Shown: positions 26,719-48,597 of the stretch, one piece after another
Numbering within the stretch: position 1 is the first letter of the stretch
Layout of the letters: every line of letters begins with the position of its first letter
Source: Macrostomum lignano
Lineage: Eukaryota
Assembly (NCBI GenBank): GCA_002269645.1
Contig: NIVC01003177.1
Coordinates: 1-64,000, forward strand
DNA length: 64,000 nucleotides
Reading direction: 5' to 3'
Position numbers and translations under genes: made by a program
Notes under the pieces: model-generated
Database searches by the model: none
Seen by the model: only the letters and a program-made list of their open reading frames with translations
Told to the model about the DNA's origin: nothing

Positions 26719-28580
26719 CTGACAAGCAGGTTGATGATGCTGTTGCCTACTGTTTGATGCACGCCAACGATCCACTTAGGCGTCATAGCAAGATTGTCAA
26801 GTAGTTTTCTTCAGTAATTTGAATTTAACTTGACTTTTTTCAGGGTAGCCCTGCATCATTGAAATCCTGGAAATCCCCGGCAATTTTACTCATGGGCTGA
26901 TTTTTATCAGTTGAAATTTTCTATTAGATCATATTAATTTTAGCAATGAGGACATGTAGATAGAAGTAAAAGAAAATACTTAAAGTTCAGAAATTGAAGG
27001 GCGCTTGAAAAATTGCAAGGGTGCCTAAAAATGAAGTGCACCTCAAGAATTCAGGAGTGTGCCTCAAAAATTGAAGGGCACCAGGAAAATTGTAAAAGTT
27101 GAAGGGTGCCTGAAGAATTCGAAGGTGGGCGCCTCAAAAATCGAAGGGATTGAGATATCCTGGAAAATCCTTAGAATGAAAGTCCTTGAATGTCCAGGGA
27201 AACCCAGGGAATTTTTCTCCCGCAATGGCAGGGCTACTATGTTACTTTGAATTTGACTTGCCTTTAGTAAGTGCTTTAGTAATTGAATTAATGTGACTGT
27301 CTTTTCCATCTTACATTACACAACAATCATGTTACACCTCTTTACCATTTTAATACCCCTGAATGTCTTAATCCAAAATAAAGGATTATAAGAAATTACA
27401 TCTGTTATTGAGGACAAGGAGGTCACTTGGTGTTTGACATCCTCTATATAGAACTGTGAAATTGTTTCTGTGTCTTCAGCTTCAGTCTTAGTTTTTTTCG
27501 TAACAAAATTTTATCCCTTGAAAGAGCAGTAAAGTATACGAGTGCATCGCTGTAACTACGACAGAGACTCGCCAGGCGATATCGCGGGGCGATCTGCAGC
27601 GATATCGCACAGGCGGACAATGGCAACACTTTGGCAATAATTGGGCGGTCGCCCGGCAACAATTTTGCGAGTCGCCAGGCGATGTCGACGCGGTCTTTCC
27701 ACAAGGCTTTTGGTTATGTAGGCAATTTTCTCCAAACTTGCAGTTGCACCATTTGATCAAAGAAGAAATTTTCCCATGATGTGATGGTACGTTTGTCTTG
27801 GTTAAGGAATTATTCAATATTTGCTAAGAGTAGGCCTAAGACTAAGAGTAAGATAGTTGAAACAGGTCGATTCTTTAATAGTTCCAGACATTAGCTAATA
27901 ATAATATAGTAATAGACTAAGACTAGTGCCATAATATAAAATTTTTGCAGATTTTTTGACGATTTTTAAAGCAAGTTCAAATAAAACATAGTTTTAAATG
28001 AAACAAGTAAATGAAAAAATGAAAACCTGGTTGCCTGGTCGAGTGACTCAGCTTTAGATATAATAATAAGAATATATTCCTGTGGACTTGTGACACCTTC
28101 CTGAGTTACTGAGTATGGGTAAAGACAAAAAAATCCTATTATTTTTAGCTAGATAGATAGACACAGACAGACCATTTTTAATATATGATTATGGAAGATT
28201 TTGTATATTTAAATTTTGTATGTTTAAGATAAACGGCTATAGCTCCATGTGACGCACAATTTTCATAAATAAATAAACTTGAATAAAAAAATAAAGTCGT
28301 TTTATAGCAAGTATAAAAAATAGAATGAAGTACTTTTTTTAGGCCTATTATTGTCTTTTTGTAACATACGTATGACTAATATCCTTCTAATATTAAACGT
28401 AAGAAGTTATTTTGTTTTTAATACAGTTGTTTTTTAATTCTGTCAACATTTATTATAACGGCGGCAGACTGCTCTGCTCTGTTGCTAACATTTTACTGTG
28501 ACTTAGTCCGCTGTGTTGTTGACCGTTCTTGCATTCATTCCTTTCAATGGTTTCTTTTGGCTTCTTCACAGAGCCCGAAA

Positions 28581-28634
28581 ATTACGCGTAAAAAGAAAAG
28601 ACGTAGAAATCAAAGGGTTAATCAGTACCCTTTT
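28581..28634 (+). CDS. uORF (uCC) exon A: AUU-initiated ITRKKKRRRNQRVNQYPF
   Basis: gaaaATT context, basic N-terminus, perfect phase-0 donor TTT|GTAAGT, and a polypyrimidine acceptor ttcttcacag| at 28571. Confidence 0.7.
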
Positions 28635-29057
28635 GTAAGTTTGATTAAATTTTTGTTTGCTTATGTAGGGCCTATGATATGGTATATGGGCATTCTTTCG
28701 TTTTACGATCACCTAGCACTGTCCCTATGGGAGTCGGGAGTTTCGTTATACGATCCCCCCACACAGGACGAAAAATTGCTCTTGAAATCGAACTTCCAAA
28801 TGGGACCATTTCTAAGTGTGTCATTTTAACATAAAATCTTGTCTTATAGAAGTTAGAAGCCTGTCCTTATATTCACTTTTGTTATGCAATCATTTAAATG
28901 GTGAATTTATATGCAGATGATTGCAAGACGAAACCAAAAGAGCTTGTAGATTTTGACTTACAATCACACTAATAGTAAAATTGTATTGGAGGGATCGTAT
29001 GATAAAATGGTAGGAAATTGTTGCTATAGGCCTAATAGACCCATAGTGCGGAAGGAT

Positions 29058-30133
29058 GGCTACAGGTCAAAAGGGCGACAGATCAAAAGGGCGACAGTTA
29101 AAAGGGCGACAGTCAAAAGGGCGACAGTCAAAAGGGCAACAGTTACAGTGTATTTATATTGAAAATATGAGTTCCACGTACATTAAAAGTATTTGTTAAA
29201 AGCATAATGTGTAATGTCGCTGTTGCATGTTCGGTGTTGCCAATGATGCCGATGGCAGCCATCACACTGCAAGCCTTGCTGACGATGGCGGACCTCATTT
29301 TCACATACTATGCATGAGTTATCCATTTTAAAGAAATCAATATGCAGCCTGCTTCCATCAGCTTTCTACTAGCATAACTACATGTAGCTATATATGCATC
29401 CAACTAAACCAAATGGCTACATGTACACATTCAAGCTCAACACGGCCCTTACCTATCCCCTTATTCCCCCCAAAGAATTTTTTTATTAAGTAGTAGTAGT
29501 AGTAAGTTGGCTCAGGCAAGAAGCCTGTTTGGCCAGTATATTTCTGTGTATTAAAGATATTTTAGCATTAGTTGTTTAATTACACAGTTTTCACAGAATT
29601 TCACAGTCTGTTCACTGTTTAAATTTAAAAATTTCAACTTAAAAAAACAAAGATAATCAGTCCTCTATTTATTGTAACAAGTTGTATGAAAATGAAAATA
29701 TAAGACTATCGCAAAACATTATTTGACAATTGGTAATGCCAAAAAAAATTAAGATTGTAAAAATTGCGTTTGGTTCAATATGGAATTGCGCGCCAAAAAA
29801 AAGTCTCAATTTTCCGTCTTATATGCCAGATGCAAGAATTCCATGCTGGCTTATATGGTATAGTGATTTCAGTGAATGAAATAAATAAACCCCACTGATC
29901 TATGTTTCAATGTACAATGTATGAGCGTACATTAAATATTAGAACCCCATTCTAACATACAAGTACAAATTGTTAGCACAAAAATTGTTATTGCTAAGAT
30001 TCTAAGATTTTCTAAGAAACGAGGTTTCCCATCCTTCCACTTAAGTAGTTCTTGGTCTAATACCCTGTCACCCTTTTGACTGTCGCCCTTTTGACTGTCG
30101 CCCTTTTAACTGTCGCCCTTTTGATCGGTTGCC
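29058..30133. mobile_element. Non-autonomous TIR/foldback-like element with 15-bp subterminal tandem repeats
   Basis: Ends ggctacaggtc / gatcggttgcc. (AAAAGGGCGACAGTC)n occurs in inverted orientation at both ends. TSD ggaaggat (29050-29057, 30134-30141). Confidence 0.85.
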
Positions 30134-31463
30134 GGAAGGATTTCTGTATACAACGGAAGGTAAATTTTCATTTCGGCTTGTTGTACGACAGTACGACAGG
30201 GATTGGAAAATGGTACTAGTGTTGTACGACAGAGTTAGAGTTTAAGGAAGTGCTGTACGCCATAGTCAGAAAGGTGGCAAGTGCACGCGGGAATCAATTT
30301 ATGGAAAAATCCTTGGTGCACGCCAATGTACGCCAATTTTTTAAAACCCTTAACATGACGTTTCTGTTGCACGCCAAAAATCTTGAATACCAAAAATCAT
30401 GTACGCCTCATGTACGTGTGATTTGAATATTAACTGTATTGGATACTATTTTTAAATAAATTTTCTACACGTTAAACAAAGTTTATATAAAAAAAGGAAA
30501 TTCGCTACAAAGAACATAGTGAGTATCAAAAACTTTTTCTTCATATTTCAAGAAACAAATAAACTGAAAGTCTACAAGAGTCACAAAATAAGAGTGTTTA
30601 AAAGTTATTGGATATTTTAATTTTAATATAGGCTGCAGAGTGTAGGCTTGGCTGTAGGCTAGGCTGTAGCCTCAACTAGTTGGTTTAATCAATATTCAAA
30701 TTCAATTGTTCACGTTTAACTTTATATATTGTATATATATAGTGTATATATCTATATCTGACTTGTTGATATACTGTCAGTTTGTAATTGCACGCCAAGG
30801 TTACACACCAAGTAAAAAACTTGTATGCTGAAAATTTAGGCGTGGCTTGAGACCCCTATTTGCACGCCAACTTTGCACGCCAAAATTTTAGCGTGGCTTG
30901 TGCACAAGGGAAAATTCCCGCGTGTAGGCCACCTTCCTGAGTATGGGCTGTACAACAAAAATAGTGGCACTTACATATGTGGGTAGGTGCGGGAAATTCT
31001 TGATATTGCGTTTTTTTAATATGCAAAGTAAAACAACAGATATATTGTACTTTTCTGCTTGCAATGTCAAGTATAGTTTTGCGCCAATAAAATTGAATTT
31101 AAGAGTTTGTACAAATATAATACGGATAATTTAAATTACCCTTTGAGTGGAAAAGTGCAACTATTGAATTTTTACTTCTTTGCTTCAACGCAATACGTTA
31201 ACAACGACGTTATGAGTTAGTTATGAGACTACGAGTATCTGGTACTGGTGTCCGATTGTCCATCAAAGGAATACTAACTATGTCTATACTTCATGTATGA
31301 GTCGTATGACATTGACAAGTGTACGACAGACAGACATGTAACATGTTTACATGTACGACAGTGTACAACATAGCGCCCCCCAAAAATTAGCGATGTACGA
31401 CATGTACGACAGGCGATCCCTGTGTACGACAGAGATTTCTGGCGTATACCCGTCCTCATACAT

Positions 31464-31619
31464 GCGCAACTTTGGGATTCACTCGGCCGTTTCTATTGGC
31501 AACACACGCATGTAAGTCGCTATTGGACAGAACAGTAGTCACGTGACTGCTCTCAGCCAATAGCGACTTACATGCGTGTGTTGCCAATAGAGGCGGCCGG
31601 GTGAATCCCAAGGTTGCGC
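31464..31619. repeat. 156-bp near-perfect palindrome (hairpin MITE-like)
   Basis: 63-bp arms with about 4 mismatches; the centre contains AGTCACGTGACT. Confidence 0.9.
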
Positions 31620-33015
31620 CCAAGCATGCCCGTCCTTCCGGACCATGGTAATAGACATTTCAACTAAACAATCAATTGCAGCCTCTAATATGTCCGCAAA
31701 CCAAAAGCCACCCGGCTCTTTTTACATGGCTCTTTTTGCACGCCTTTTCAATCACCGCCACTGCCCTATGCCCCCCCCCCCTCACTTTTGTCATATGATC
31801 ATCCCTCGGTATAGGCCTAACATTGCCTAACATAGGCCTAACTTTGCCAGGGATATAATATGTAATCCATTCACTTTTGTCATACAATCCCTCTCATACA
31901 ATTCTACCAATGTGGTGATCGTAATTTGAAACCTACAAGCTCTTTCGGATTTGGTTTTATCTTGCAATCATCTGCATATAACTTTACCATTTAAATGGTT
32001 GTATGACGAAAGTGAAAATAAGCTACGTGCTTTCATAACTAATACTACGCCCACAATCCTCAAGTTGACTGAAAAGTGAGTTGCAGTAATGAATTAGGTT
32101 GACTGGAAAGTGAGTTGCAATGATTTTGTTCGTAGAAAATAAATGTGAAATGTACTTTTTGATAAACTAGAGTGTCTTTTCGACTCTTTTTTAATGGGGA
32201 TTGTAAGAAGAAACTTGACCTGCTCAGGGATCGTAAAACAAAAGAATGCTGGTATATAGTGGGTGTAGGCCCTATCTGTATATAAAACTAGGCCCCAGTC
32301 TAAGACTAAATAATATAACATGTTTGCAGTTTTTGGTGATTTTGTGGCTTTCAGTTTGTGGACATTGTAGAGGCTGAACTTGTGTGTTTAATTGAAACAT
32401 TGATTAGGCCTATACCAACAATTTCCTATCACTTCAAAATGATAGGCTAGGAAAAGCCGCAAAACTGCAAACTAATTCTGGGCACCTCTCCCTCACTTTT
32501 GTCTTATAATCCCCCCTAGTTAAATGGATGTATGTTTTGTAGGGTGATCATAATATGAAAGTGAATTTGGTTTTGTCTTATGATCACAGATCATCTACAA
32601 ATTTCACTAGACACCATTTAAATGATTATATAACAAAGTCAAAAGTGAATATAAGCTACACATTTCTACAAGACACAAGATTTGATATTACTATAAAAAT
32701 ACTTTAAAAAATGGTCCTATTTTGAAATTTGATTTTAAGAGCAATTTTAACTTAACCTTTTCATTTTCTATTGGGGATCATATAATAAAAGTCCGAATTC
32801 TCATAGGATAGTGCTATGTGATTATAAAACAAAAGAATGCCGACATGGTTGTGGGCCATGTCTATGATTATGCTAGGTGCATGCCTGAATAAAAATTGAA
32901 AAGTTACAAATGCATGCCAAAAAATTTAGGTTTACACCTACATTTTCAAATTGGTCAATAGACAAAATGACTATTTTGTGGTGGGTGTATTAACTGTTTT
33001 AGTATTCTTATATGA

Positions 33016-33680
33016 CATCTCTACCTATAAAAATCAAAACTCTGTCTGTCTGTGGACAAATTACTTCGCTATGGACTCCCAAACCGCTCAACCAAATTAC
33101 ACCAAACTTTACACCCACCCTAAACTTACTACGGAGAATGTCTTAGGCTACCTTTTAATTTCCTAGACTCAAGTCTTCCTACCTAAAAGTACAAGAAACT
33201 GCTCAAAATGCGCGATTTTTTCACTAAATCCTCCATAGCGCCGCTCCACTTCTACCGATTCTCTTCAAATTTGACACAGATAATCTTTAACTATTTTGGC
33301 ACAATCATGTAAAATTTCGAGTATCAAAGTTAATCCTGAGCGGTGCTGTGCGCTTTTAAAGTTAGGCTGTTTTTTTCAGCGTAGCAACCACCCCAACCTC
33401 CGCCCGCCTGCCTCTCTTACCCGATCTGGGCCCAGATGTGTAAAAGGGTTTCAAAATTGACTAACTTTCAGCTGCCATAAGTTTGCTTCACGTAAAGCGA
33501 TTGACTTCAAACTTGACACAATTCTTCATTGACCTATTCTCTGTCTAAATGTAAAGTTTCAACTCTGTAACTCAACCGAAAAAGAAACTGTAAGCATGTG
33601 AAGTTTGTCTGCTTTTTCTGTTGTTTGTGCCACTCACTCACTCATTCCCCAGAGCCAGACGAAGGGTCAGGCGATAGGAC
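33016..33680 (+). mobile_element. Helitron/Helentron-associated (Lep1/DINE-like) non-autonomous element; boundaries approximate
   Basis: Starts ctacctataaaaatcaaaactctgtctgtctgt..aaaccgctcaaccaaatt..caccaaactt, a 5' pattern typical of such elements. Confidence 0.4.
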
Positions 33681-34168
33681 TGAATGTACATAGCAAATGT
33701 ACAGTGTTTTGGAATAACTTTATTTATAGCCTTCTCTGCACCCCGAGAGTGGAGAGGCTTCGTTTAGCCATAACAGTTTAGTGAGAAATTCTAACCACTG
33801 CCCTCCCCTCTGTATTGGCAAACTCTGCAGCAGTTTAACAGTGGATGGCAATTGGCAAATCGAAAAAAAATCCAGCATGGTTTGTAAAAGCGAAAGATTT
33901 ATGAAAAGGCGATGCCATGCAATGAAATACAACCCTACTAAATTAGGCACACCGCACACCATGGAAATTTTAAGTTTTAAAAGTACTCTAAAATTTAAAT
34001 GGCCTCCTAAGAAATGTGTATTTCCTTGGTTGTTAGACTGATGCAGACTGCAGTGGAGCTGAAGATACACAAATTCCTTTCAGGGCTGCAAATTGGCAAG
34101 AAAGATGACGTGATCAAAGCATGAGAACAACCATGAGAGTAGTACGTCCCACAAACTGGCTTTCGAAG

Positions 34169-35074
34169 CAGGGATCGGCAGACTTTTACTTCAAAAGCCA
34201 GATAAAGAATCCAGCTTATGTGCAGGCCAGATGAGAGTGGAAAGGAGAAGGAATAGACTAATTAGTATTAGAAGAGAGGAGAGGCGAGAGGGGGATAAGA
34301 GAAAACATGGAAGATAAGAGGAGAGACAAGTGGTGAGGAGAGAGCAGAGAAGAAGGGAGGAAGAAGCGAGAGGAGGGGAGAAAGGAGGGAGAGGAAAGAG
34401 TAAATGTAAGAAGAGGGGAGAGATGAGACAGAGGATCGATGAGAGGAAAGTAGAGAAGAGTGAGAAGAGAGTAGAGATGAGAGAGCAGAAAGAAGATGAC
34501 AGAGGGTCAAGAGGAGGAGAGGAGAGGAGAGAGTAGAAAGGATAGAGAAGAGAGGAGATAAGAGGGGGAGAGAGGAGTGAGAAGAGAAGAGATAGAGATA
34601 AGAGAGGGGTGTAAGAAGAGGGGAGAAAGGAGAGATGAGATTGTAGAGATGAGACAGATTAAAGGAGAGATGAGAGAGTAAAGATGAGAGATGAAAAAGG
34701 TGAGAGGAGAGTGCAGAGAGACGAGAGAAGACAAGAGAGGGAGACAGTATAGAAGAGGGAAGAGAAGAGAAGAGGAGAGGAGAAAGGAGAAAGGAAAGAG
34801 AGGAGTCAGAAGAGGTGAAAGAGAAGAGTACAGAGGAGATAAGTGAGAGAACGTATAAGAGAGTAAAGATGACAGATGAGAGAGCAGAGATGAGGGTGAA
34901 CAGACGAGAGATGGGAGAGTAGAGAGAACAGAGGAGAGAGAAGAGAGAAGAGATTACAGAGACTAGAGGAGAGAGGAGAGACAGGGAGGGAGAAGAGGAA
35001 ATAGGAGAATGAAGAGGGGAGAGAGTAGAGAGGAGAAGAGAGATGGGAGAGGAGAGATAAGAGAGAGAGAGAGG

Positions 35075-35171
<97 letters not shown>

Positions 35172-35676
35172 AGGGAGAGAGAGAGAGGGAGGGAGGGAGA
35201 GAGAGGGAGGGGGAACAGAGAGAAATGAGAAGAGATAAGAGAGAAAAGATAAAAGAGGAGAAAGGAAAGATGAGAGAGAAACTAGACGAGAGAGAAAAGA
35301 GGTGAGGGAAGAGAATAGAGAAGAGGGGAGAAGGGAGAGAGGAGAGAGGAAAGAAGAGATGAGAGGAGAGAGAGAGGAAAGAGTAAAGAGGAGAGATGAG
35401 AGAGTAGAGGAGAGAGTTAAGAGAAAAGAGAAAAGAATAGAGAGGAGAAGGGAGAGACGAGAAAAGAGGGGGAGAGAGGAGAGGGGAGAGAAAAGAAGAG
35501 ACAAGAAATGAGATAAGAGAGATGAAAGAGAAGAGAGATAAGGGAAGAGAGGAGAGAGGAGAGAGGAGAGACGAGGGATGAGAGAGAAGAAAGGAAACAG
35601 AAGAGACGATAGAAATTTTAAAGGATCCAAGGGACGTAGGGAGAGTCAGGGAGAGGCCAGAGTTTGCCAATACATG
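34169..35676. mobile_element. hAT-Charlie (MER58-like) MITE ends enclosing about 1.4 kb of GA-rich low-complexity DNA
   Basis: Left cagggatcggcagactttt..aaaagccagata and right ggccagagtttgccaatacatg. Flanks tttcgaag/ttttagag match only partially. Confidence 0.5.
34270..35620. repeat. Polypurine (GA-rich) low-complexity tract with a perfect (GA)n core near 35070-35165
   Basis: Read directly from the sequence. Confidence 0.95.
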
Positions 35677-36270
35677 TTTTAGAGTCAGACAGACATTTTG
35701 CCTGACATTCTGCGCAGTACCCCAGCCAACAGTATCAATTTTTTCCTCAAATTCTAATTTTACACGAATGTGCTCCATTTTATGTCTACCTCAATCCTAC
35801 TAACTATTAACAAGTTTTGTTTTGTGCATGGCCTTAGATTTCAGAATGCATGCAAAAGTAGTTCCGGGGATTGAAATTCCCCGGGTTCAAAATCCGCGGG
35901 TTTCAACAGCTTGTAGTATATATTAAATGATAAGTTAATTCATTTGTGTATAATTTAGTTTCAAAGATTCAAAGCAAACAAAAAATTTTATTGTTTATTT
36001 ATACATTGCATGTAATACAAGATGGACCACATAATGCACCTGATTTAAAACATTAATAATTTTTGTTATTTGTAACCAATGTTGACAAAATTTTAATTCA
36101 ACATTGCCACATGTATAGCATTATATTTGCAAAATTTACACATGCAAGCAAGCACATTGTGTATAAGATCTTTTTGGCTAATTATTTGGTTTATGATTTA
36201 TCTTTTGCCAATGATATTTATAGTAAAAAAAGTTGATACCCATGAAAATTTGTTTAAATGATATATTATA

Positions 36271-36645
36271 AGGGGCCGTAGCCCAGCAGTAGCGTAGCTG
36301 CTCTGGTGTGCCAGCGACCCAGGCTCGATTCCAAGTGCAGTCACATTAATCTGAGGCTGAATTGGAATCTCGGCTTGGCTCTGCTCGTGCAATTAACGGC
36401 CTTGAGAGCCAACCTCCCAAGGCGCAGCAGTGAAGTGTACATGCCTAACGATAATATAAAGTTAGGGCCGCTGTACACTCCTGTGTGAGTATGTGCCTGC
36501 GTACGTATCCGCGCGCTTGTATGCCTGCTCAGGGGAGTTGGCAAAATGGGCAGTAAAGCCTCTCACCAGTTGTGTGCCCATGTCGCTTAAAGTGTGCCAG
36601 GATGCATACAACCCCCCTGCCTCTAATAAAAAAAGATATATTATA
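36271..36645 (+). mobile_element. Full-length tRNA-derived SINE
   Basis: Head ggggccgtagcccagcagtag (A box) and ggctcgattcc (B box), the shared central block, and an A-rich tail aataaaaaaaga. Confidence 0.8.
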
Positions 36646-37599
36646 AGCTTAAAAACCAAAAAGCTTTTGCTTAAAAATGAACTTTTCAATCTTTTTTCCA
36701 CTTAATACTAATTCTTTCACCTGATTCTATGTATTGCACACTTAGGTGTACATGTGCACTTTTTTATTAGGAGTCTTGCTATGTATATCTAAGTCCTAAA
36801 TTTTGTCATGCAGGGCCAATGCATGCCCAAATTTTTGGGTCTATACTATATGATTTGGAGTGTAGGTTGTAGGAAGGTTTCAACCCACAAGGAATTTAAA
36901 GGAATTTTTGGCAAAAGTCAATAATAGCAAAGAATACTTAAAATAAATGTTTTCACTTTCAATTCAGGGAGGGCTCTAAATCCATAAGGTTAGGGACTCA
37001 AACAACCTTTTCATATTATATAGCAATATACACATTGTGATTAGGATAGTGTGGACTATGGAGCCTATAGGCTTAAGTTCAGAAAAATAAAGCTCAGATA
37101 AATAAATAAAGGCAAAAGGAAAAGAAGTAGAAGAAGTCAGGCAGCTTTCAGTACCTAATCACCTTGGGAACCAACTGACAAGCAAAGAAGATCTCAGTAA
37201 GAATTAGATTTTTTATTACTTTAGTTACTTTATTAACATTAGAAGAAGAGATATGAAAGAGAAGAGACAAGCAGGAGGAAAAAAAGTCAAAGGGAGAAAG
37301 AAAAGAAGGAAGTGGTGAGAGGCAAGAGCAGAGATGAGAGGATCGAAGGGCAAACTAAGACTTGATATGTATCATGCATCACCATTAAAGGGCCTGTCAA
37401 CTTAAGCTCATAAAGTGGAGCCCGAGTGACCTTTTTACACAAATGATTCATCATTTGCTCATGGTGACCAGGACACCAGGAAGCTGAAAGTTTGGCAAAA
37501 AAGAGACAAAAATAGGGAAGAACAAGCAAGGGGATTATTTACAAGTCCAATTTTCGTTGCTTTTTGCCAAACTCAGTGTCTTGGTGTTGCTGAGAGCAG

Positions 37600-38276
37600 A
37601 CAACAACAACAAGAAAATACGCTGTCAGGATGGCAAAAGTCAGCGTCACAGGGCACGCTTCATGGCTTGGGTGCGAACAAAGGCCCCGCCACTGGCAGTG
37701 TCCGGGGCGCCGGCGTCAGTCAGCAGACAGTCGACGTAACGCCGAGTTCGCGCTTGACCTCGCCGGTTAGGGTGCCTGCAGCGTGAGCAGCAGCACCTCC
37801 TGCACCGGCTGTGGGCAGTACGACTCGGCGCGGATGAGATGGCCTGCGAGCTGGAGTCGCCGACGGCGCAGTAGATCGCTTGGACGTGGCAGGCCAGCGC
37901 GGCGATAGAGTGCCTCGTTGTTGACTCGCTCGACGCCGTTGTTGAAGGCGGCGCGCAGCAGGCCAGCGTGCGCCGCATCGACTTGCTGTTCGAGTGAGTC
38001 CGTCAGCGTCCAGGTCTCGGCGTTGTAGAGCAGGACGGTCTCGATTACCGCCTGGAACAGCGCCGCCCTCTTCTGCGTGTTGACCACCAGGCCGACGCTC
38101 GCCGCAACGGCAACTAGCCTGTCCAGCTGCCGTTGGGCGCCCTCGACGGTCGAGGACAGCAAGGCGAGGTCGTCGGCGTAGCCAAGCACGCTGAGCCGCT
38201 TCTCCGGTTGACGTCGACCCACGCGTCGCCGCAGCAGAAAGCCGTCGTCGTCGGTAGGAAGAGCAGTCCGCATCAC
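37600..38276 (-). mobile_element. 5'-truncated non-LTR retrotransposon (RTE/L2-like RT C-terminus) with an internal deletion
   Basis: GYADDLALL RT motif; VNTQK is joined directly to RAALFQAVIETVLLYNAETWTL; RLQLAGHLIR; (TTG)n tail near 37600. Confidence 0.85.
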
Positions 38277-38433
38277 TGAGAGCAGAATAAAATATTATTT
38301 GTGTACAGAGGTTACTCGGGCTTAAGTTGACAGACCCTTTTTGTTCTAATGATTGTCCTATAAAATATATTAATCAGATAGGTGATTATGATCAGTTAAT
38401 TCACAAATAAATCTACTATAATTATTTATACAG

Positions 38434-38526
38434 GCGGTCAAAGACCCCGAACCACCCGATCCAAATCGTCTGCTGACTGATCACAACCGAGAACCGCCCT
38501 GGGACCCGGACCCAACAACGGGTTAG
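38434..38526 (+). CDS. uORF (uCC) exon B: AVKDPEPPDPNRLLTDHNREPPWDPDPTTG*
   Basis: Phase 0 after acceptor tttatacag|. GAA CCG CCC TGG GAC CCG at 38491-38508 reads EPPWDP. TAG at 38524-38526. The unspliced upstream frame is closed by TAA at 38419-38421. Confidence 0.8.
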   Translation, partial: AVKDPEPPDPNRLLTDHNREPPWDPDPTTG

Positions 38527-38651
38527 AGCTGGCATCGGCGGCGGCTCTGCAAAAGACAGCGAAATTAAGTAACGCCAATTCAAGTCTGACAGCGGAGAAA
38601 GCACAACTTACTAATTCAGAGAGAGCTTTGAGAGAGCAACAGATTGAAACA

Positions 38652-38927
38652 ATGAAGACTCTAGATCAGCCGATGCCTCGGGTATTTGCTAGCCAGATTG
38701 AAGCGTGCGCTTGGCTGTCCGATCAACTGCCAGCTGATTGCCAATCCGCTTCCCTGTTAGATCTTGCTGCCCTGTGGCGGGCTAGAGCCAGTCTGTTAGC
38801 TAGCTATGGCGATATTGTTGCCACTAAGCTGACAACTAGGATTGATGCTCACGCTGCCTCGGGACTGACTGGGGCACTGGCTCAGCTAGGCTGCGGTGGT
38901 AGAGTGCGAGCTAGGAATGATCTGACG
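38652..38927 (+). CDS. ODC-fold pseudoenzyme (antizyme-inhibitor-like), coding exon 1 (92 codons)
   Basis: First AUG of the predicted mRNA (aacaATGa). SASLLDLAAL ~ AFYVADLGDI; LAQLGCGGRVRARNDL ~ LAATGTGFDCASKTEI. Phase-0 donor ACG|gtgagg. Confidence 0.8.
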
Positions 38928-39039
38928 GTGAGGCTGCTACACATAGTAGCTTTTGATTGTAGGTATTTTGTTATTTAAATTACATATTTCAGCTTGGCTT
39001 CTGTTATTGTAGATTAACAGTAAGAATATGGAAAAGAGG

Positions 39040-39475
39040 AAAGAATGTAGGGGATAGTGGGTAAAGGGAGATAAGAGGGGGAGTATGTAAGATAAAATGG
39101 GGAGAAGGGAGATAAGAAGGGGAAGGTAGATAAGAAGAGATAAGAAGGGGAAGGTAGATAAGAGATGGAGAAGAGAGATAAGAGGAGAAAAGGTAGATAA
39201 GAGAGGAAGAAGGGAGATAAGAGAGGAAGAAGGGAGATAAGAGAGGAAGAAGGGAGATAAGAGAGGGAGAAGGGAAATAAGAGGAGAAAAGGTAGATAAG
39301 AGAGGAAGAAGGAAGATAAGGAGGCGTAAAGGGAGATAAGGGCGTAAAGGGAGATAAGAGGGGGAAGGTAGATAAGAGATGGAGAAGAGAGATAAGAGGA
39401 GAAAAGGTACATAAGAGAGGAAGAAGGGAGATAAGAGAGGAAGAAGGGAGATAAGGAGGCGAGAAGGGAGACAGA
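39040..39475. repeat. GA-rich degenerate minisatellite in the ODC-like intron
   Basis: Recurring gagataagagaggaagaagg units. Confidence 0.9.
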
Positions 39476-39588
39476 GTGGACGATGAATACAATCCAGTAT
39501 ATGAATTAAATGGCTAAAGGGAGGAGAAGGCAACAGCTATTAGCCTCTGCAATGTACAATTTACTCACGCTAATGCCTGATCCCACAG

Positions 39589-40520
39589 AGCGCCATCTCA
39601 TCGGGTCTAACTGGCCCCAATCTACTATTGGACAATCCGTGCAAAACTCGTTCGTTAATTAATCTAGCTAAGCGTCACAGCGTTGCTATGACAACATTTG
39701 ACAACGAAACGGAAGCTGCCCGACTAGCGGAGCAATGGCCCGGCGTGTCGGCCCTGCTGCTGGTCAGGCCGGAAGGCGCCGACTCGCTGGGAGATGCCAC
39801 CCTTGGCGCCGAGCCAGGCACAGTTGCTAGCGTACTGGCCGCAGCTAAGAGTTTCGGTCTAAACGTTGTCGGCGTGTCTGTAGTTGACTGTGCCGTTGGT
39901 GCCGCAGGTGTGCTCGAGTCTGCTCGAGTCGCTATCAGTGCTGGCCGCCTGCTTGGTCATCGGATGTCGCTGCTAGATATCGGCACTAATAGTTTTCTAA
40001 CCGCCGAGTTGAACTATCAGCTGTTTGAGTTTATTGTCGATAATAAGATTGACGCATTGATGACTGATTCGACTGACGCTCTGCTAAGCCGATCGATTGT
40101 TTTAGCTACCCGACTGGTTGCTAAGCAACGGATTGAGGACGATGCTGAAAACGGCAACAGCAACAAAGGAGACTGGCGTTGCACAGTCGGCGATTCAGCC
40201 TTTGGCGGTTTTTCCGGTTGGCGACTTCAAGTTGGCATCGACAATGTGTCGATGTCGGTAGCCGCTCCGGAGCTGCTTGGAGTTGTTCGTTCGGCTAGCG
40301 ACTTTTGCGACGCAGCGGCATCCGTTGAGAGCGATGGCGGTGGCAACGTCTGGATGTACGGCGTTACAGATTCGACTGAGGATCGGCTTGGCTGTCTGCG
40401 ACAGTTCGGCTTGGACTGCGACATTGGCGACTGGCTGCTCTGGTCCGGTCTGGGAGCCCAGGATAGCCGGGCTGCTAGAAAGGCTAACGGTCTGGCTGAG
40501 CCTGAGTTCCGGTGCTTCCT
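39589..40520 (+). CDS. ODC-fold pseudoenzyme, coding exon 2
   Basis: Acceptor ccacag|AGC, in frame with the 39628-40524 ORF. ODC motifs NPCK, MTTFDNE, LNVVGVS, LLDIG and GDWLL..LGA are present. Donor CT|gtgagt at 40520, or read-through stop TGA at 40522-40524. Confidence 0.88.
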
Positions 40521-40599
40521 GTGAGTATTTTTGATTTTTTTGTTGTTTTTTATTATGTCTTTCCATTCCAGCTACTTCATTATCCACTTTTTGGATAAC

Positions 40600-40830
40600 A
40601 CTTTTTGAGTTTGAGTACACTATTTCTGTTTAGTTTGCGTACACCAATTCTGAGTTTGAGTACACCATTTTTGAGTTTGAGTACACCATTTCTGAGTTTG
40701 AGTACACCATTTTTGGGTTCGAGTACACCACTTCTGAGTTTGAGTACACCATTTCTGTTTCGTTTGAGTATACTATTTCTGGGTTAAAGTACACCATTTC
40801 TGAGTTTGAGTACTCCAGTACACCATTTCT
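40600..40830. repeat. About 21-bp tandem repeat (TTTGAGTACACCATTTCTGAG)
   Basis: About 10 degenerate copies. Confidence 0.85.
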
Positions 40831-42179
40831 TGAGTTAAAACATTGCTCAGCTTATGTACACCGTACATCTCTATTACATTAAATAAGCCTATCGAGACTC
40901 AGGTACTCATTTTAAGAACTTCAGTTGGCTTCAGATATCCGTCAGAACCTAACTTGCCTAAGCTCACTTCTTTCGACATTCTGCCATAGAATACCCATTT
41001 GAAGGTTTACAGGTATTTTTCAACCTTTCTGCACACGGGGCATGTAATACAAGCTACTACAATTGTAAGGATTTAGTTAATGTTACAAAGATAGAAGTTT
41101 TTATCTTGTAGCGAACATTTGGCTTGTCGTAATAAATTATTATTACAGATAAATCTGCCCTGGGGCCTAGGGCTAAAAGTGTTTTTGTAATTTTCTCAGT
41201 ACTGGCCAACAAAGTCACCAGTTTACCGCGTGCAACCCTCTCGCGTTGCAGTTTTAGCAGTGCTGCTAAATACAAATGTGCCAACCCAACAGTTGAAAGC
41301 TTACTGGGGTGGAATTTTCTATTACATTAATTTATGCAACAGCTTGTTTCAGCCTTTAACCTGTGGAACCTGGAGCTGTATAGGCAGATAAGAACTTATA
41401 GAGGTTAGCGGGTTTCTCTATTAGCACAAGAGGTCTATTAAATTGCTTAATATCAAACCGACAACTGGTGGATTAACCATTCAGGTTTCTTGGAAATGAA
41501 TTTATTGATAATATTACATTAAGCTTTGGAACTTTCTAAAAAATCTTCAGAAGAATTTAAAGAATCACTTAGAAAACTTAAGGAAAGGTCTAAGAAGGTC
41601 TAAGGTCTAAGAAAGCTTTGTTAAAATTTCGAAACTTTCTAAGACAGCTTCGCAGGAGTTTAGAAACTTTCTAAGAAGGCTTCGTGGTAGTTAAGGAACT
41701 TTCTAAGAAAGCTTTAGGGAAGGTTCGGAACTTTCTAAGAAAGCTTCGTGGAAGTTTAGCAACTTTACTGTTCCTTGAGAAGTGAATCAGCCACTTCTCA
41801 AACTAAATTTAAAAAATCAGGATTTTTTTTCTTATCTAAACTAGTTCGGAATGAATATTTCTTAGCCATTTAATATATTAAGCTTAACTAGAAAAATCCT
41901 GTTTTAGCTGAGTGTATTCTATTACTCGGACTATAATCAGCTGACTACAAACCGGTGCAAAGGCTTGCACATTTCAAGGCTAGACTGTGTCCACGGAGTA
42001 GACAAATATGAGACAAATAATACGCGACCAGTTTAAAGTGGAAACAGCAGAAAGCTGCTGAATACACAGTACCCCCAGCTCTCAGTGTGTGCTGGGATAG
42101 AGTCTACTGTTGTAGTATATTAAAGTACATTTTAGCCCCGTTTATCATATTTCCAGTTTCTCTTTGCTTGCGCTCGTGG

Positions 42180-43130
42180 CTTCCGCTCCCTCCATCTGCT
42201 TCCTCTCCCTACATCTGCTTCCTCTCCCTCCATCTGCTTCCTCTCCCTCCATCTGCTTCCTCTCCCTCCATCTGCTTCCACTCCCTCCATCTGCTTCCTC
42301 TCCCTCCATCTGCTTCCACTCCCTCCATCTGCTTCCTCTCCCTCCATCTGCTTCCACTCCCTCTATCTGCTTCCTCTCCCTACATCTGCTTCCACTCCCT
42401 CCATCTGTTTCCACTCCCTCCATCTGTTTCCACTCCCTCCATCTGCTTCCTCTCCCTCCATCTGCTTCCTCTCCCTACATCTGCTTCCACTTCCTCCATC
42501 TGCTTCCCCTCCCTCCATCTGCTTCCTCTCCCTACATCTGCTTCCACTTCCTCCATCTGCTTCCCCTCCCTCCATCTGCTTCCTCTCCCTCCATCTGCTT
42601 CCTCTCCCTCCATCTGCTTCCACTCCCTCCATCTGCTTCCACTCCCTCCATCTGCTTCCTCTCCCTCCATCTGCTTCCACTCCCTCCATCTGCTTCCTCT
42701 CCCTCCATCTGCTTCCACTCCCTCCATCTGCTTCCTCTCCCTACATCTGCTTCCTCTCCCTCCATCTGCTTCCCCTCCCTCCATCTGCTTCCTCTCCCTA
42801 CATCTGCTTCCACTTCCTCCATCTGCTTCCCCTCCCTCCATCTGCTTCCTCTCCCTCCATCTGCTTCCTCTCCCTACATCTGCTTCCACTTCCTCCATCT
42901 GCTTCCGCTCCCTCCCTCTGCTTCCTCTCCCTCCATCTGCTTCCTCTCCCTCTCTTCTTCCTCTTCCTCTCTCTGCTTCCTCTCCCTCCATCTGCTTCCT
43001 CTCCCTCCCTTCTTCCTCTTCCTCTCTCTGCTTCCTCTCCCTCTCTTCTTCCTCTTCCTCTCTCTGCTTCCTCTCCCTCCATCTGCTTCCTCTCCCTCCC
43101 TTCTTCCTCTTCCTCTCTCTGCTTCCTCTC
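42180..43130. repeat. Pyrimidine-rich 19-bp minisatellite (TCCCTCCATCTGCTTCCTC)
   Basis: Direct tandem units; source of the spurious long ORFs here. Confidence 0.95.
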
Positions 43131-43230
43131 CCTTTCAAATTCTTCAATCGAGTTGCAAAGCAGCTAATGCGATATTCTACTATAAGTAGCTCAAATAGAA
43201 TATCTAGTCGTTTTTTCTTTCATTTATCAG

Positions 43231-43441
43231 GCAATCGGGCCGCGAGCCAACGGCGCCCATCGGCAGCGGCGGAAGCGCCAAAGCTAGCAGCAGCGCCCCA
43301 GCCGTCCGCAGCCGATGCCGGACCCGCCACTCGTCGAGCTGCTGCTACAGCGAGACCGTGTCAATCAACGCTTCGTCTGTTGGCTCTGGCGAGCAGTCGT
43401 CTACTGCCGATCGAGAAATCTGCTCAGTGATGCTCTCCTAA
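43231..43441 (+). CDS. Probable terminal coding exon of the ODC-like gene (Ser-rich tail)
   Basis: Acceptor ttttttctttcatttatcag|. A phase-2 join gives L-QSGREPTAPIGSGG...SSTADREICSVMLS* (TAA 43439-43441). GC-rich island. Confidence 0.55.
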
Positions 43442-44364
43442 GTTCAAGTATTTTAAGTGGCATAGCTTTGATATCATAAAGGAAAACAAACTATTTTTGA
43501 AGAATAAAAGCAAAATTAGAATTTAAAATCCTTGCTATGCTACTTAAATGCAACGACGCGCTCAGCTCGAACGTAATTTTTTCTAATTAAATACAAAAAC
43601 GATTCTGTGTGGTTTTTATTTTTTCTCCAAGCTGGAAGATTTGAATTGGCGCGAAAAGTTTCGCTTTACCGTAGCCCACTTTATCTATATACATGTATAT
43701 ATTCATTTTTTGCTGGTCGCCGCCAGCCCACCCGCTCCCCCGATTGTTGGCGTTTGTTGAGGAACTCCAACTGCGGTCCCAGTGTTGTCTCAGTTTTAGC
43801 TAGAGCATATAAGCAGTACCCTGCTTTATATTTATTTATTTGTTTATTTATCACCTTTCACTATTCAAATGTTTGAATTTTTGCTCTATATTATATATTA
43901 GCAAACCCAACCAAATACTGATTAATCAATATTTATCCTTATTCAGTGCTTCTTCGATTTTTCAAAGATAAATCTTTAATGTTTTTTTAAGTTGCAAATC
44001 TAATTAATTCGATTGCTTGCCCCGTGTGGTCTCCCCGTTTTTGTTTTAATCTCCGCCGGGTTTTTTGTTTATTTGTCAAAAACTGATTGCGCAGTGCAGT
44101 ATAACAAAGAATAATAATTTCTGGCACCAAATTTGATTTTATTTATTACATCTACGCTTCTAAGCCTGCAGCTCTGTTTTGTTCGAGTTTTAAGAAAATT
44201 TTCACCTCTAAAAATGTGATCCGCCACGCAAAATTATATCCACCTGTTTTAAAAATATATATGTTACTGTGGTTATTAATTTCACGGCACTGCTTTGCCT
44301 CAATTAATTTTAACATCTAAGGAAAACGAATTTTTATGACGCATAAACTTTCTTATTTCTACTT

Positions 44365-46880: not shown

Positions 46881-46968
46881 AATGATAACACTTTAAGAAT
46901 TCGCCCACAACTAGACTAGTCAAGAAAAGGAATACCCCAAAGAGTAATTCGGGGAATTCCTTCCTCAC

Positions 46969-48480: not shown

Positions 48481-48597
48481 TATGTGATGGTAGAATTCGG
48501 TAATTATAACCCAAAATTATTATGATAAAATTTCTCAATCTTATTTTCAATTGAGAAACTAATCAGGAATCTAGAAAGAGCCGAGCCCATCGCTTAC

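What the first reader, a model, noticed from the sequence alone, without database searches (positions are those of the whole stretch)
38652..40524. ODC paralogue with degraded catalytic residues: candidate antizyme-inhibitor-type pseudoenzyme
Seen: the ODC fold motifs remain (NPCK, TFDNE, VVGVS, LLDIG, GDWL) but catalytic ones are altered. YAVKCN (PLP lysine) is not recognisable and aligns roughly to TRIDAH; SFHVGS reads SVVDCA; the GGGF phosphate loop reads GTNSF; GPTCD (catalytic Cys) reads GVTDS; GAY reads GAQ. Known: inactive ODC homologues have arisen repeatedly and act as antizyme inhibitors, and planarians have inactive ODC-like genes. Inferred: a non-catalytic regulator that kept uCC-type feedback, consistent with a role in polyamine homeostasis.
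Basis: partly seen in the sequence, partly recalled or inferred. Interest (0 to 1): 0.7.

Follow-up and report, generated by a model that had tools for sequence, protein, structure and literature searches.

The report
Catalytically dead ODC-like flatworm gene
This is an intact, conserved gene of the flatworm Macrostomum lignano for an ornithine-decarboxylase look-alike that has lost nearly all catalytic residues. It keeps a polyamine-sensing upstream reading frame, so it is most likely a regulator of polyamine levels, a kind of protein already known from other animals.

Summary
Window 38652-40524 (+) encodes an ODC-fold protein (Pfam PF02784 E 4.5e-12; hhalign vs ODCs E 1e-44; AF2 model matches human ODC, TM 0.72-0.81). 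Only 4 of the 18 key ODC residues survive. The PLP lysine K69 is Asp65.

The coordinates are incomplete. The "stop" at 40522 lies inside a GTGAGT splice donor. The real gene has three coding exons (38652-38927, 39589-40520, 43231-43441; 472 aa). This model is identical to M. lignano PAA52833.1, annotated "hypothetical protein". A leader exon lies 10 kb upstream.

It is not a pseudogene. Two M. lignano copies differ by 6 synonymous and 2 non-synonymous changes. Spliced transcripts from two related species keep the same dead active site (46-52% identity, dN/dS about 0.2-0.3).

The leader carries a 48-codon upstream conserved coding region with an invariant DHN-x-x-PPWDPDP core, plus a 14-codon AUG mini-uORF. 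PPW is the AZIN1-type stall motif. This part of the leader is better conserved than the protein.

The antizyme-binding segment and contact residues P113, D134, D361 and N398 are retained. All ODC dimer determinants are lost. An antizyme-inhibitor-type role is therefore the best reading, but antizyme binding is untested. The family is not orthologous to vertebrate AZIN1/2. Verdict: new member of a known kind.

The parts
28547..28591 (+). AUG mini-uORF in the leader exon: 14 codons plus stop, MVSFGFFTEPENYA*. It overlaps the candidate AUU start of the uCC.
   Evidence: Same position, same length and the same MVSF...EN.A* ends in the mRNAs of species A and B. The surrounding nucleotides are nearly invariant.
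28581..28634 (+). uCC part 1: candidate non-AUG start AUU (context ccgaaaAUUa) to the end of the leader exon, encoding ITRKKKRRRNQRVNQYPF. The 5' end of this exon is not determined. The conserved block begins at about 28545.
   Evidence: Found with a pattern taken from the relatives' mRNA leaders: 1 match, 0 expected. The donor CCCTTTT|GTAAGT lies at 28635. The junction to 38434 is contiguous in the spliced mRNAs L001 and L006. The choice of AUU as start codon is an inference.
28635..38433 (+). Leader intron of 9.8 kb, holding repeats and a reverse-transcriptase fragment at 37770-38276 (-).
   Evidence: Donor and acceptor are GTAAGT...TATACAG. The second M. lignano copy has a shorter intron lacking 29057-30133 and 33018-35914. 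RVT_1 hit.
38434..38526 (+). uCC part 2: AVKDPEPPDPNRLLTDHNREPPWDPDPTTG*. PPW lies at 38494-38502 and the stop TAG at 38524-38526.
   Evidence: The core DHN(R/S)(E/D)PPWDPDP is invariant in three species. 28 of 48 aligned codons are invariant at the amino-acid level. There are 0 differences between the two M. lignano copies over 383 nt of leader exons, against 2-4% in introns.
38499..38501 (+). CUG in strong context (gccCUGg), in the frame of the main ORF and lying inside the PPW codons. It is 51 codons upstream of the AUG with no stop between.
   Evidence: Present in all three species, and species B has no AUG before the conserved N-terminal block. The frame stays open in all three with a joint shuffle probability of about 0.002, assessed post hoc. 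Function unknown.
38652..38927 (+). Coding exon 1 (residues 1-92). It includes Asp65 in place of the PLP lysine and Arg84 in place of D88.
38928..39588 (+). Intron 1, with a purine-rich 20-nt minisatellite at 39064-39471.
   Evidence: Splice sites. Tandem repeat. The join restores a collinear alignment with ODC and with the relatives' cDNAs.
39589..40520 (+). Coding exon 2 (residues 93-403). It holds the retained antizyme-binding segment NPCKTRSLINLAKRHSVAMTTFDNETEAARLAE, the degenerate Gly loop G-T-N, DSTD in place of EPGR, and TDS in place of TCD.
40521..43230 (+). Intron 2. Its donor GTGAGT contains the apparent stop TGA at 40522-40524. It holds minisatellites at 40602-40817 and 42179-43133.
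   Evidence: The relatives' cDNAs and GenBank PAA52833.1 read ...CFLQSGRE... straight across this join.
43231..43441 (+). Coding exon 3 (residues 404-472). It encodes a tail predicted to be disordered, with conserved QSGRE, RTRHSSSCC and the C-terminal ADREIC(C)SVMLS*. Stop TAA at 43439-43441.
   Evidence: pLDDT is below 50 for residues 408-459.

Best explanation
The locus is an expressed, selectively maintained gene of Macrostomum lignano, present in three near-identical copies in the public assembly (Mlig005245g1-3). It encodes a 472-residue ODC-fold pseudoenzyme that can neither bind PLP nor decarboxylate.

Its mRNA leader carries a 48-codon upstream conserved coding region (uCC). The uCC probably starts at a weak AUU, and its PPW motif is expected to stall ribosomes when polyamines are high. 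By the mechanism established for AZIN1, stalled and queued ribosomes would then block access to the main ORF. The protein would therefore be made only when polyamines are low.

The protein keeps the ODC surface that antizyme grips but has lost the residues that hold the ODC dimer together. It is therefore most likely a monomeric antizyme decoy, that is, a functional antizyme inhibitor that frees ODC and polyamine uptake from antizyme. It evolved independently of vertebrate AZIN1/2.

Shown: the gene model, the fold, loss of the catalytic set, purifying selection, and conservation of the uCC. Inferred: polyamine-dependent stalling, antizyme binding, and the monomeric state.

My confidence by layer: real conserved pseudoenzyme about 0.95; polyamine-responsive uCC control about 0.65; antizyme-inhibitor action about 0.45.
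For: Gene model:
- Canonical splice sites, and a product identical to PAA52833.1.
- The exon joins, including the leader join, are contiguous in the relatives' mRNAs.

Fold:
-.
- AF2 pLDDT 75, pTM 0.76. Foldseek top hits are all ODC, TM 0.72-0.81 normalised to the target.

Dead active site:
- Only G171, G235, D361 and G387 of the 18 key residues remain.
- K69D, D88R, R154L, E274D, R277D, C360E and Y389Q are shared or similarly replaced in four family members.

Selection:
- 6 synonymous against 2 non-synonymous differences between the two M. lignano copies, with introns 2-4% diverged.
- dN/dS 0.2-0.3 against the relatives, with dS saturated.

uCC:
-.
- The PPW / AUU / ribosome-queuing mechanism is described in PMC9082881, PMC11058473 and PMC2811004.

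Antizyme side:
- M. lignano has an antizyme gene with a UUU-UGA shift site (PMC1874602).
- Residues 108-132 (human 112-136) are the 25-residue window most similar to the ODC consensus (52%) and the most invariant stretch within the family.
- The antizyme contacts P113, D134, D361 and N398 named in PMC4595762 are invariant, while their catalytic neighbours C360, D364 and F397 are lost.
- Position 125 is Arg in all four members. Lys125 is one of the two residues that give AZIN its higher antizyme affinity (PMC3084279).
- The dimer determinants R277, Y331, D332, Y389, K169, D364 and F397 are all replaced.

Direction of feedback: a uCC represses synthesis at high polyamine. That fits a factor that raises polyamines, not one that lowers them.
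Against: - No binding or activity data exist.
- Other human ODC-antizyme contacts are not kept (Q116, Q119, V137, R144, L166). Position 140 is Ala/Asn/Val, not Lys.
- Flatworm antizyme is itself very divergent, so human contact residues are a weak yardstick.
- A second stretch (residues 161-201), probably structural, is retained about as well as the antizyme-binding segment.
- uCCs also precede active ODCs in invertebrates and fungi, so the uCC does not by itself indicate an inhibitor of antizyme.
- This uCC lacks the terminal Pro-Ser reported for animal uCCs.
- I did not find the canonical M. lignano ODC that an inhibitor of antizyme would protect.
Confidence: 0.5

Rival explanations
1. It is a pseudoenzyme whose present job lies outside the ODC-antizyme circuit, for example scaffolding or signalling as suggested for planarian ODC5/6. 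The uCC would be an inherited leftover that merely ties its expression to polyamine status.
For: [quoted passage not shown] The family has a conserved Cys-rich tail of about 70 residues (RTRHSSSCC ... ICCSVMLS) with no counterpart in AZIN. The degeneration is extreme: the C-terminal Pfam domain PF00278 is no longer detectable.
Against: The uCC is not a decaying leftover. It is better conserved than the protein (28 of 48 codons invariant; 0 of 383 nt differ between the copies). The antizyme-binding segment is the most invariant stretch of the protein.
Confidence: 0.25
2. It is an ODC inhibitor. The dead subunit would heterodimerise with active ODC and poison the shared active sites, the alternative raised by Ivanov et al. 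2010 as quoted in PMC5574924.
For: ODC active sites form across the dimer interface, so a dead partner would inactivate both.
Against: All residues known to stabilise the ODC dimer are replaced: R277D, Y331L, D332Q, Y389Q, K169T, D364G, F397A. That R277, Y331, D332 and Y389 are the dimer determinants comes from my own recollection of Su et al. 2009, J Biol Chem. In addition, a uCC shuts synthesis off when polyamines are high, which is the wrong sign for a negative regulator.
Confidence: 0.07
3. It is a decaying pseudogene or an annotation artefact with no function.
For: Catalytic residues are lost, there is an apparent early stop at 40522, and repeats fill the introns.
Against: The stop is intronic. 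The 472-codon frame is intact in the two M. lignano copies examined at DNA level, and all three annotated copies encode full-length 472-aa products. The two copies differ by 6 synonymous against 2 non-synonymous changes. Spliced mRNAs were recovered from 4 and 2 independent sequencing runs of two other species, with the same substitutions. dN/dS is 0.2-0.3.
Confidence: 0.02
4. It is still an enzyme with a different chemistry or substrate, like mouse ODC-related protein Gm853 (leucine decarboxylase) or Xenopus AZIN2/ODC2.
For: Some ODC paralogues once thought inactive turned out to be decarboxylases; see the titles of PMC7671201 and PMC6738921.
Against: Those enzymes keep the PLP lysine and the cofactor cage. 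Here the Schiff-base lysine, the His197 stacking residue, the Gly-rich phosphate loop, R277 and C360 are all gone, and consistently so across the family.
Confidence: 0.02

Closest known systems
Vertebrate antizyme inhibitor 1 (AZIN1)
   Same: It is an ODC-fold protein without decarboxylase capacity. Its mRNA leader has a long non-AUG uCC with a Pro-Pro-Trp stall site near the uCC's end. It retains the region corresponding to the antizyme-binding element, has a basic residue at position 125, and has lost the ODC dimer determinants.
   Different: It is not an orthologue. HMMER scores against human ODC (49.6 bits) and AZIN1 (49.0 bits) are the same, and no intermediate sequences exist among 1.84 billion representatives. 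It is much more degenerate: only 4 of 18 key residues are kept, K69 itself is lost, and PF00278 is undetectable. Position 140 is not Lys. It has a conserved Cys-rich C-terminal tail. The uCC does not end in Pro-Ser, and an AUG mini-uORF overlaps its start. Antizyme binding is untested.
Planarian ODC-like paralogues, especially ODC6 (Smed-ODC-6 / DjODC6; PMC5574924)
   Same: They are flatworm ODC homologues with K69, D88, R154, H197, S200, G236, E274 and R277 replaced, and were proposed to be non-catalytic.
   Different: ODC6 keeps C360, D361, D364, G387, Y389 and F397; the Macrostomum protein loses four of these six. The substitutions differ (K69S against K69D, D88S against D88R). No planarian sequence scored above ordinary ODCs against the family profile, so orthology is not supported. 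Whether planarian ODC6 has a uCC was not examined.
Catalytically inactive ODC homologues that arose repeatedly in eukaryotes (Ivanov, Firth & Atkins 2010, as summarised in PMC5574924), and uCC-bearing ODC homologues (Ivanov et al. 2008, as summarised in PMC2811004)
   Same: It fits both patterns: a lineage-specific dead ODC copy, and a uCC with adjacent prolines near its C-terminus and a likely non-AUG start.
   Different: This Macrostomum family is not mentioned in the papers I could read. It is annotated only as "hypothetical protein" or "Orn_Arg_deC_N domain-containing protein". I could not read either primary paper, so I cannot exclude that Macrostomum ESTs were listed there.
Ornithine decarboxylase (EC 4.1.1.17)
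   Same: It has the two-domain fold, a TIM barrel plus a beta-sheet domain. It keeps the NPCK, TFD-E, GDW and NG motifs, and has a long, probably disordered C-terminal tail containing a Cys motif.
   Different: It has no PLP lysine, no phosphate loop, no catalytic Cys and no dimer determinants.

Membership tests
ODC / group IV PLP-decarboxylase fold (Pfam PF02784 + PF00278) | Significant sequence match to the N-terminal barrel domain model | tested here: met
   PF02784, E 4.5e-12, 46.3 bits against a cut-off of 23.4. hhalign against 44 ODCs, E 1e-44 over 354 columns.
ODC / group IV PLP-decarboxylase fold (Pfam PF02784 + PF00278) | Match to the C-terminal sheet domain model PF00278 | tested here: not met
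   No PF00278 hit up to E = 1, whereas canonical ODCs carry both domains. The domain is nevertheless present structurally: the Foldseek alignment covers about 410-430 columns and hhalign reaches residue 398.
ODC / group IV PLP-decarboxylase fold (Pfam PF02784 + PF00278) | Predicted 3D structure superposes on solved ODCs | tested here: met
   AF2 pLDDT 75.2, pTM 0.76. The top 50 PDB hits are all ODC or the related viral arginine decarboxylase, E down to 2e-27, TM 0.66-0.81 normalised to the target (0.72-0.81 for the human ODC chains).
Active ornithine decarboxylase (EC 4.1.1.17) | The 18 key residues, including Schiff-base K69 and catalytic C360 | tested here: not met
   Four of 18 are kept (G171, G235, D361, G387). 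K69 is D65 and C360 is E356. Two alignment methods agree.
Active ornithine decarboxylase (EC 4.1.1.17) | Measured decarboxylase activity and PLP binding | not testable with these tools
   Needs purified protein.
Antizyme inhibitor (functional class) | ODC homologue lacking catalytic capacity | tested here: met
   Met by sequence only.
Antizyme inhibitor (functional class) | Binds antizyme, more tightly than ODC does, and releases ODC | not testable with these tools
   Only indirect evidence. The antizyme-binding segment is the best-retained and most invariant stretch. P113, D134, D361 and N398 are invariant and position 125 is Arg. Antizyme exists in M. lignano.
Antizyme inhibitor (functional class) | Human antizyme-contact residues conserved | tested here: inconclusive
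   Kept: P113, D134, D361, N398, and F170 as Leu. Not kept: Q116, Q119, V137, R144, L166, L330, Y331 (residue list). Flatworm antizyme is divergent, so the test is weak.
Antizyme inhibitor (functional class) | Monomeric (ODC dimer determinants lost) | tested here: met
   By sequence only. R277D, Y331L, D332Q, Y389Q, K169T, D364G and F397A. The oligomeric state itself is untested.
Antizyme inhibitor (functional class) | A canonical ODC and an antizyme exist in the same organism | tested here: inconclusive
   Antizyme: yes, from the literature (PMC1874602). Canonical ODC: the profile search listed only the best 120 of 7992 hits, and none was from Macrostomum.
Vertebrate AZIN1/AZIN2 orthologue group | Closer to AZIN than to ODC, or linked to AZIN by intermediates | tested here: not met
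   Equal scores against ODC and AZIN1. An exhaustive profile search found only 4 family members, then a gap from 718 to 147 to at most 110 bits for ordinary ODCs.
Animal uCC of ODC homologues (Ivanov et al. 2008) | Conserved upstream coding region in the leader, conserved at the amino-acid level | tested here: met
   48, 55 and 54 codons in the three species. 28 of 48 aligned codons are invariant, and third codon positions vary most (14, 15, 23 variable sites by position).
Animal uCC of ODC homologues (Ivanov et al. 2008) | Two adjacent prolines (PPW in AZIN1) near the C-terminus | tested here: met
   PPW at codons 39-41 of 48, invariant in the three species.
Animal uCC of ODC homologues (Ivanov et al. 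2008) | Ends in Pro-Ser | tested here: not met
   The ends are TTG*, RYC* and PRG*. The criterion comes from PMC2811004.
Animal uCC of ODC homologues (Ivanov et al. 2008) | Non-AUG start (AUU) in good context | tested here: inconclusive
   There is no in-frame AUG. A conserved AUU with A at -3 is present in all three species. Actual initiation cannot be tested here.
Animal uCC of ODC homologues (Ivanov et al. 2008) | Polyamine-dependent repression of the main ORF | not testable with these tools
   Needs reporter assays or ribosome profiling.

The most novel reading that the evidence does not exclude
Macrostomid flatworms independently evolved an extremely reduced antizyme inhibitor whose translational switch differs from the AZIN1 design in three ways. 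An AUG mini-uORF overlaps the weak uCC start. A conserved, strong-context CUG in the main reading frame sits exactly on the PPW stall codons, so a polyamine-stalled ribosome would physically cover the start site of a long isoform; in one species this CUG is the most plausible start, since there is no AUG. And the protein carries an ODC-like Cys-containing disordered tail that could make the decoy itself a proteasome substrate.
Probability: 0.15. Interest if true: 0.65.

Novelty: new member of a known kind. Interest (0 to 1): 0.45.

Why it matters
Dead ODC copies and uCC leaders are textbook examples of how polyamine levels are sensed through translation, but functional data outside vertebrates are almost absent.

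M. lignano is a tractable flatworm model for regeneration and stem cells in which RNAi and transgenesis are available (my own knowledge, not checked here). A clean, lineage-specific pair of uCC and pseudoenzyme there would allow three tests:
- whether antizyme inhibition evolved convergently;
- how little of the ODC scaffold is needed for it;
- whether the PPW/eIF5A stall mechanism operates in Lophotrochozoa.

Practically, the finding corrects the public annotation. Three UniProt models wrongly fuse the uCC to the protein, and GenBank calls the product "hypothetical".

Tried and rejected
1. Lys58 (ATKLT) as a displaced PLP lysine. Rejected: hhalign places it in an insertion, it is absent in the relatives, and Asp65 aligns with K69 in both methods.

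2. Protein ending at 40524. Rejected: the stop is inside a splice donor, and the third exon is conserved and annotated.

3. Pseudogene. Rejected.

4. UniProt models A0A1I8GZH3 (P0001), A0A1I8GEF0 (P0006) and A0A1I8H2L5 (P0007), which join the uCC to the main ORF. They need three mutually different joins, one of them an implausible removal of a few bases, and they disagree with the GenBank model and with the relatives' mRNAs. I treat them as prediction artefacts.

5. Hits P0008 and P0010-P0012, which ranked just below the family in the exhaustive search. They are tandem-fused canonical ODCs with summed scores, not intermediates.

6. Search for the canonical M. lignano ODC with a 44-ODC profile. 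Only the best 120 of 7992 hits were listed, none from Macrostomum, so the question stays open. A literature search for Macrostomum polyamine genes gave nothing further.

7. The primary uCC papers (PMC2481320, PMC5916843) are not held. I relied on secondary descriptions.

8. Rfam and tRNA scans of the window found nothing.

9. The species behind sequencing runs SRR28338163-66 and SRR30276804/12 could not be identified with these tools. I call them species A and B.
Full report
**What is there**

The window is from the free-living flatworm Macrostomum lignano. The spliced product is 100% identical to UniRef A0A1I8GZH3 over the shared part. It is identical over all 472 residues to GenBank PAA52833.1/PAA68180.1, annotated "hypothetical protein BOX15_Mlig005245g1/g3".

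On the + strand, the ATG at 38652 opens a 92-codon exon that ends at ACG|GTGAGG (38927|38928). A 661-nt intron follows, filled with a purine-rich minisatellite. The frame resumes after CCCACAG| at 39589.

After a 2.7-kb repeat-rich intron, the CDS continues at TTATCAG|G (43231) and ends at TAA 43439-43441.

**Is it an ODC homologue, and is the active site gone?**

Homology is secure:
- Pfam PF02784, E 4.5e-12.
- Human ODC, E 2.9e-12, and AZIN1, E 4.6e-12, which are indistinguishable.
- Profile-profile comparison of the four family members with 44 canonical ODCs: probability 100%, E 1e-44, 354 aligned columns.
- An AlphaFold2 model built on a 48-sequence alignment: pLDDT 75, pTM 0.76, with the barrel domain mostly above 88.
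- That model hits human, mouse and trypanosome ODC structures with E down to 2e-27 and target-normalised TM 0.72-0.81.

I used the list of 18 residues critical for ODC catalysis (Ivanov et al. 2010, as tabulated in PMC5574924). The M. lignano protein keeps only G171, G235, D361 and G387. The other fourteen are replaced:

| Human ODC | M. lignano |
|---|---|
| K69 | D65 |
| D88 | R |
| R154 | L |
| K169 | T |
| S200 | A |
| G236 | T |
| G237 | N |
| E274 | D |
| R277 | D |
| C360 | E |
| D364 | G |
| Y389 | Q |
| F397 | A |

.

MAFFT and hhalign agree that Asp65, in TRIDAH, stands at the PLP-lysine position. The nearby Lys58 lies in an insertion and is not conserved. The Pfam model of the C-terminal domain (PF00278) no longer detects the protein, although canonical ODCs carry both domains.

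**Is it functional or decaying?**

The word-index search of 5.8 billion proteins found only the M. lignano cluster and two relatives. These are P0002 (52% identity) and P0003 (46% identity). Each was assembled from several independent sequencing runs as contiguous, intron-free transcripts.

An exhaustive HMMER search of 1.84 billion representatives added one more distant member, P0009. It comes from the same sample as P0002, so it is a second paralogue in that species. After it, scores drop to ordinary ODCs at 110 bits or less. The apparent intermediates are tandem-fused ODCs.

The relatives share the dead state. All three have R-x-D-A at the K69 site, and P0009 has Gln there.

Nei-Gojobori dN/dS is 0.2-0.3, with saturated dS.

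Within M. lignano, the copy on NIVC01000029.1 differs from the window copy by 8 substitutions in 1419 coding nt, of which 6 are synonymous and 2 non-synonymous. Intron 1 and the 3' UTR differ by about 3-4% including indels, and the surrounding non-coding DNA by about 2%.

This is a maintained gene, not a pseudogene.

**The leader**

The relatives' mRNAs carry a conserved frame upstream of the main ORF that ends ...DHN(S/R)(E/D)PPWDPDP.... In the window, the 3' part of this frame is 38434-38526 (AVKDPEPPDPNRLLTDHNREPPWDPDPTTG*). It begins directly after an acceptor, TATACAG|.

A pattern taken from the relatives' leaders located the missing 5' exon at about 28545-28634, with donor CCCTTTT|GTAAGT (1 match, 0 expected). 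The leader intron is therefore 9.8 kb.

The joined leader aligns with both relatives with long runs of invariant nucleotides.

Counted from a conserved AUU (context ccgaaaAUUa), the upstream conserved coding region is 48 codons in M. lignano and 55 and 54 in the relatives. Of the 48 aligned codons, 28 are invariant at the amino-acid level, and third codon positions vary most. PPW sits at codons 39-41.

A 14-codon AUG mini-uORF (MVSF...EN.A*) has the same length and position in all three species. It overlaps the AUU.

The two M. lignano copies show 0 differences in 383 nt of leader exons.

According to PMC2811004, PMC9082881 and PMC11058473, the AZIN1 uCC works as follows:
- It starts at a weak AUU.
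- It ends with a PPW motif at which ribosomes stall when polyamines impair eIF5A.
- It then blocks scanning ribosomes by queuing.
- Animal uCCs usually end in Pro-Ser.

The Macrostomum uCC has the first three hallmarks by sequence, but not the Pro-Ser end.

**Mechanism proposed**

*Shown:* a dead ODC fold, purifying selection, and a conserved uCC with PPW.

*Inferred:* high polyamine levels stall ribosomes on PPW and repress synthesis of the protein. At low polyamine levels the protein is made and binds antizyme, freeing ODC and polyamine uptake.

Support for the last step is indirect:
- M. lignano has an antizyme gene (PMC1874602).
- The 25-residue window most similar to the ODC consensus (52%) is residues 108-132, which correspond to human 112-136 (NPCK plus most of the 117-140 antizyme-binding element). 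The overlapping window 105-129 is the most invariant within the family (80%). The region around the PLP lysine, the most conserved part of real ODCs, is 0-5% identical.
- Of the human ODC-antizyme contacts listed in PMC4595762, P113, D134, D361 and N398 are invariant in the family, although their catalytic neighbours C360, D364 and F397 are lost.
- Position 125 is Arg in all four members. Lys125 is one of the two residues that give AZIN its tenfold higher affinity (PMC3084279).
- All residues that stabilise the ODC dimer are replaced. This argues for a monomer and against the "poison subunit" alternative.
- The sign of the uCC feedback, off at high polyamine, fits a factor that raises polyamines.

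Against:
- Q116, Q119, V137, R144 and L166 are not kept, and position 140 is not basic.
- A second stretch (residues 161-201), probably structural, is retained about as well.
- uCCs also precede active ODCs elsewhere.
- RNAi of planarian ODC-like genes gave a putrescine-independent phenotype that co-silencing of other ODC-pathway genes did not modify.

**Comparison and novelty**

Functionally, the closest analogue is AZIN1. Membership in the AZIN1/2 orthologue group fails: the scores against ODC and AZIN1 are equal, and no linking sequences exist.

Planarian ODC6 is the closest flatworm precedent, but it keeps the C-terminal catalytic residues. It showed no special affinity in the exhaustive search.

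The recurrent origin of inactive ODC homologues and the occurrence of uCCs on ODC homologues are both already described. This is therefore a new, unusually degenerate and lineage-restricted member of a known kind, not a new kind.

It differs from described cases in four ways:
- the extent of loss (14 of 18 key residues);
- the conserved Cys-rich disordered tail (RTRHSSSCC ... ICCSVMLS, pLDDT below 50);
- the AUG mini-uORF overlapping the uCC start;
- the features described in the next section.

**Unexplained**

In all three species the main reading frame stays open upstream of the annotated start, across the 3' end of the uCC. Within it, a CUG in strong context (gccCUGg; window 38499-38501) lies inside the PPW codons.

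Species B has no AUG at all before the conserved N-terminal block.

The intervening sequence is not conserved but contains no stops. The joint shuffle probability is about 0.002, assessed post hoc.

A CUG-initiated long isoform whose start site is covered by the stalled ribosome is possible but untested.

**Limits**

- There are no binding, activity or expression data for M. lignano itself.
- A canonical M. lignano ODC was not retrieved.
- The primary uCC papers were unavailable.
- The identity of species A and B is unknown.

Noticed in passing
window 38499-38501 and 38499-38651; L001 215-343; L006 192 onward: The main ORF frame is open for 51 codons upstream of the AUG, starting at a conserved strong-context CUG that lies inside the PPW codons of the uCC. 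In species B (L005/L006) there is no AUG before the conserved N-terminal block, so a non-AUG start seems required: this CUG, or an ACG in good context just after the uCC stop.
   Followed up: partly
window 28547-28591: A 14-codon AUG mini-uORF (MVSFGFFTEPENYA*) has the same length and the same ends in three species. It overlaps the candidate AUU start of the uCC. The surrounding leader is conserved at the nucleotide level, more than the coding sequence is.
   Followed up: partly
window 43231-43441 (protein residues 404-472): There is a conserved C-terminal tail, predicted to be disordered, with RTRHSSSCC and a terminal IC(C)SVMLS. MAFFT places the Cys motif opposite the RHRAACAS degron region of human ODC. 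It could be a degradation or lipidation signal.
   Followed up: no
L008 (SRR28338166), protein P0009: Species A has a second, far more divergent member of the same dead-ODC family (147 bits; K69 replaced by Gln). The contig is 5'-incomplete, so its leader could not be checked for a uCC.
   Followed up: partly
UniProt A0A1I8GZH3, A0A1I8GEF0, A0A1I8H2L5 (P0001, P0006, P0007): Three public protein models of this gene fuse the uCC peptide to the main ORF through different, implausible joins, and one also uses an alternative last exon (window 43944-43976). They look like gene-prediction artefacts caused by the coding signal of the uCC.
   Followed up: partly
window 29057-30133 and 33018-35914, compared with L007: The leader intron of the window copy holds two blocks that are missing from the paralogous copy on NIVC01000029.1. 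One of them includes the 1.1-kb AG-rich array at 34452-35606, which causes the strong GC/AT skew.
   Followed up: no
window 37770-38276 (-): A reverse-transcriptase fragment (RVT_1, E 2.7e-4) lies inside the leader intron, about 150 nt upstream of the uCC exon.
   Followed up: no
window about 54500-57360 (+): A GC-rich (0.58) LTR-retrotransposon-like block has zinc-knuckle/aspartyl-protease, reverse-transcriptase and integrase ORFs split over several frames.
   Followed up: no
window 46919-47356 (-) and beyond: There is an exon of a peptidase M1 / leukotriene-A4-hydrolase-like gene on the opposite strand, about 3.5 kb downstream of the ODC-like gene. The same neighbour is present next to the paralogous copy (L007).
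   Followed up: partly
window 25056-26012 (+); 63046-63642 (-): An ORF with a DUF659 match (transposase-associated domain) lies upstream of the leader exon. A rhodopsin-family GPCR exon lies near the window end.
   Followed up: no
window-wide (e.g. 641-1243, 10231-11370, 42179-43133, 44364-45372, 47527-48488, 50990-52164): Minisatellites with 19-33-nt units, many of them with strong strand asymmetry, are very abundant in introns and between genes. They create long spurious ORFs such as 42087-43430.
   Followed up: no
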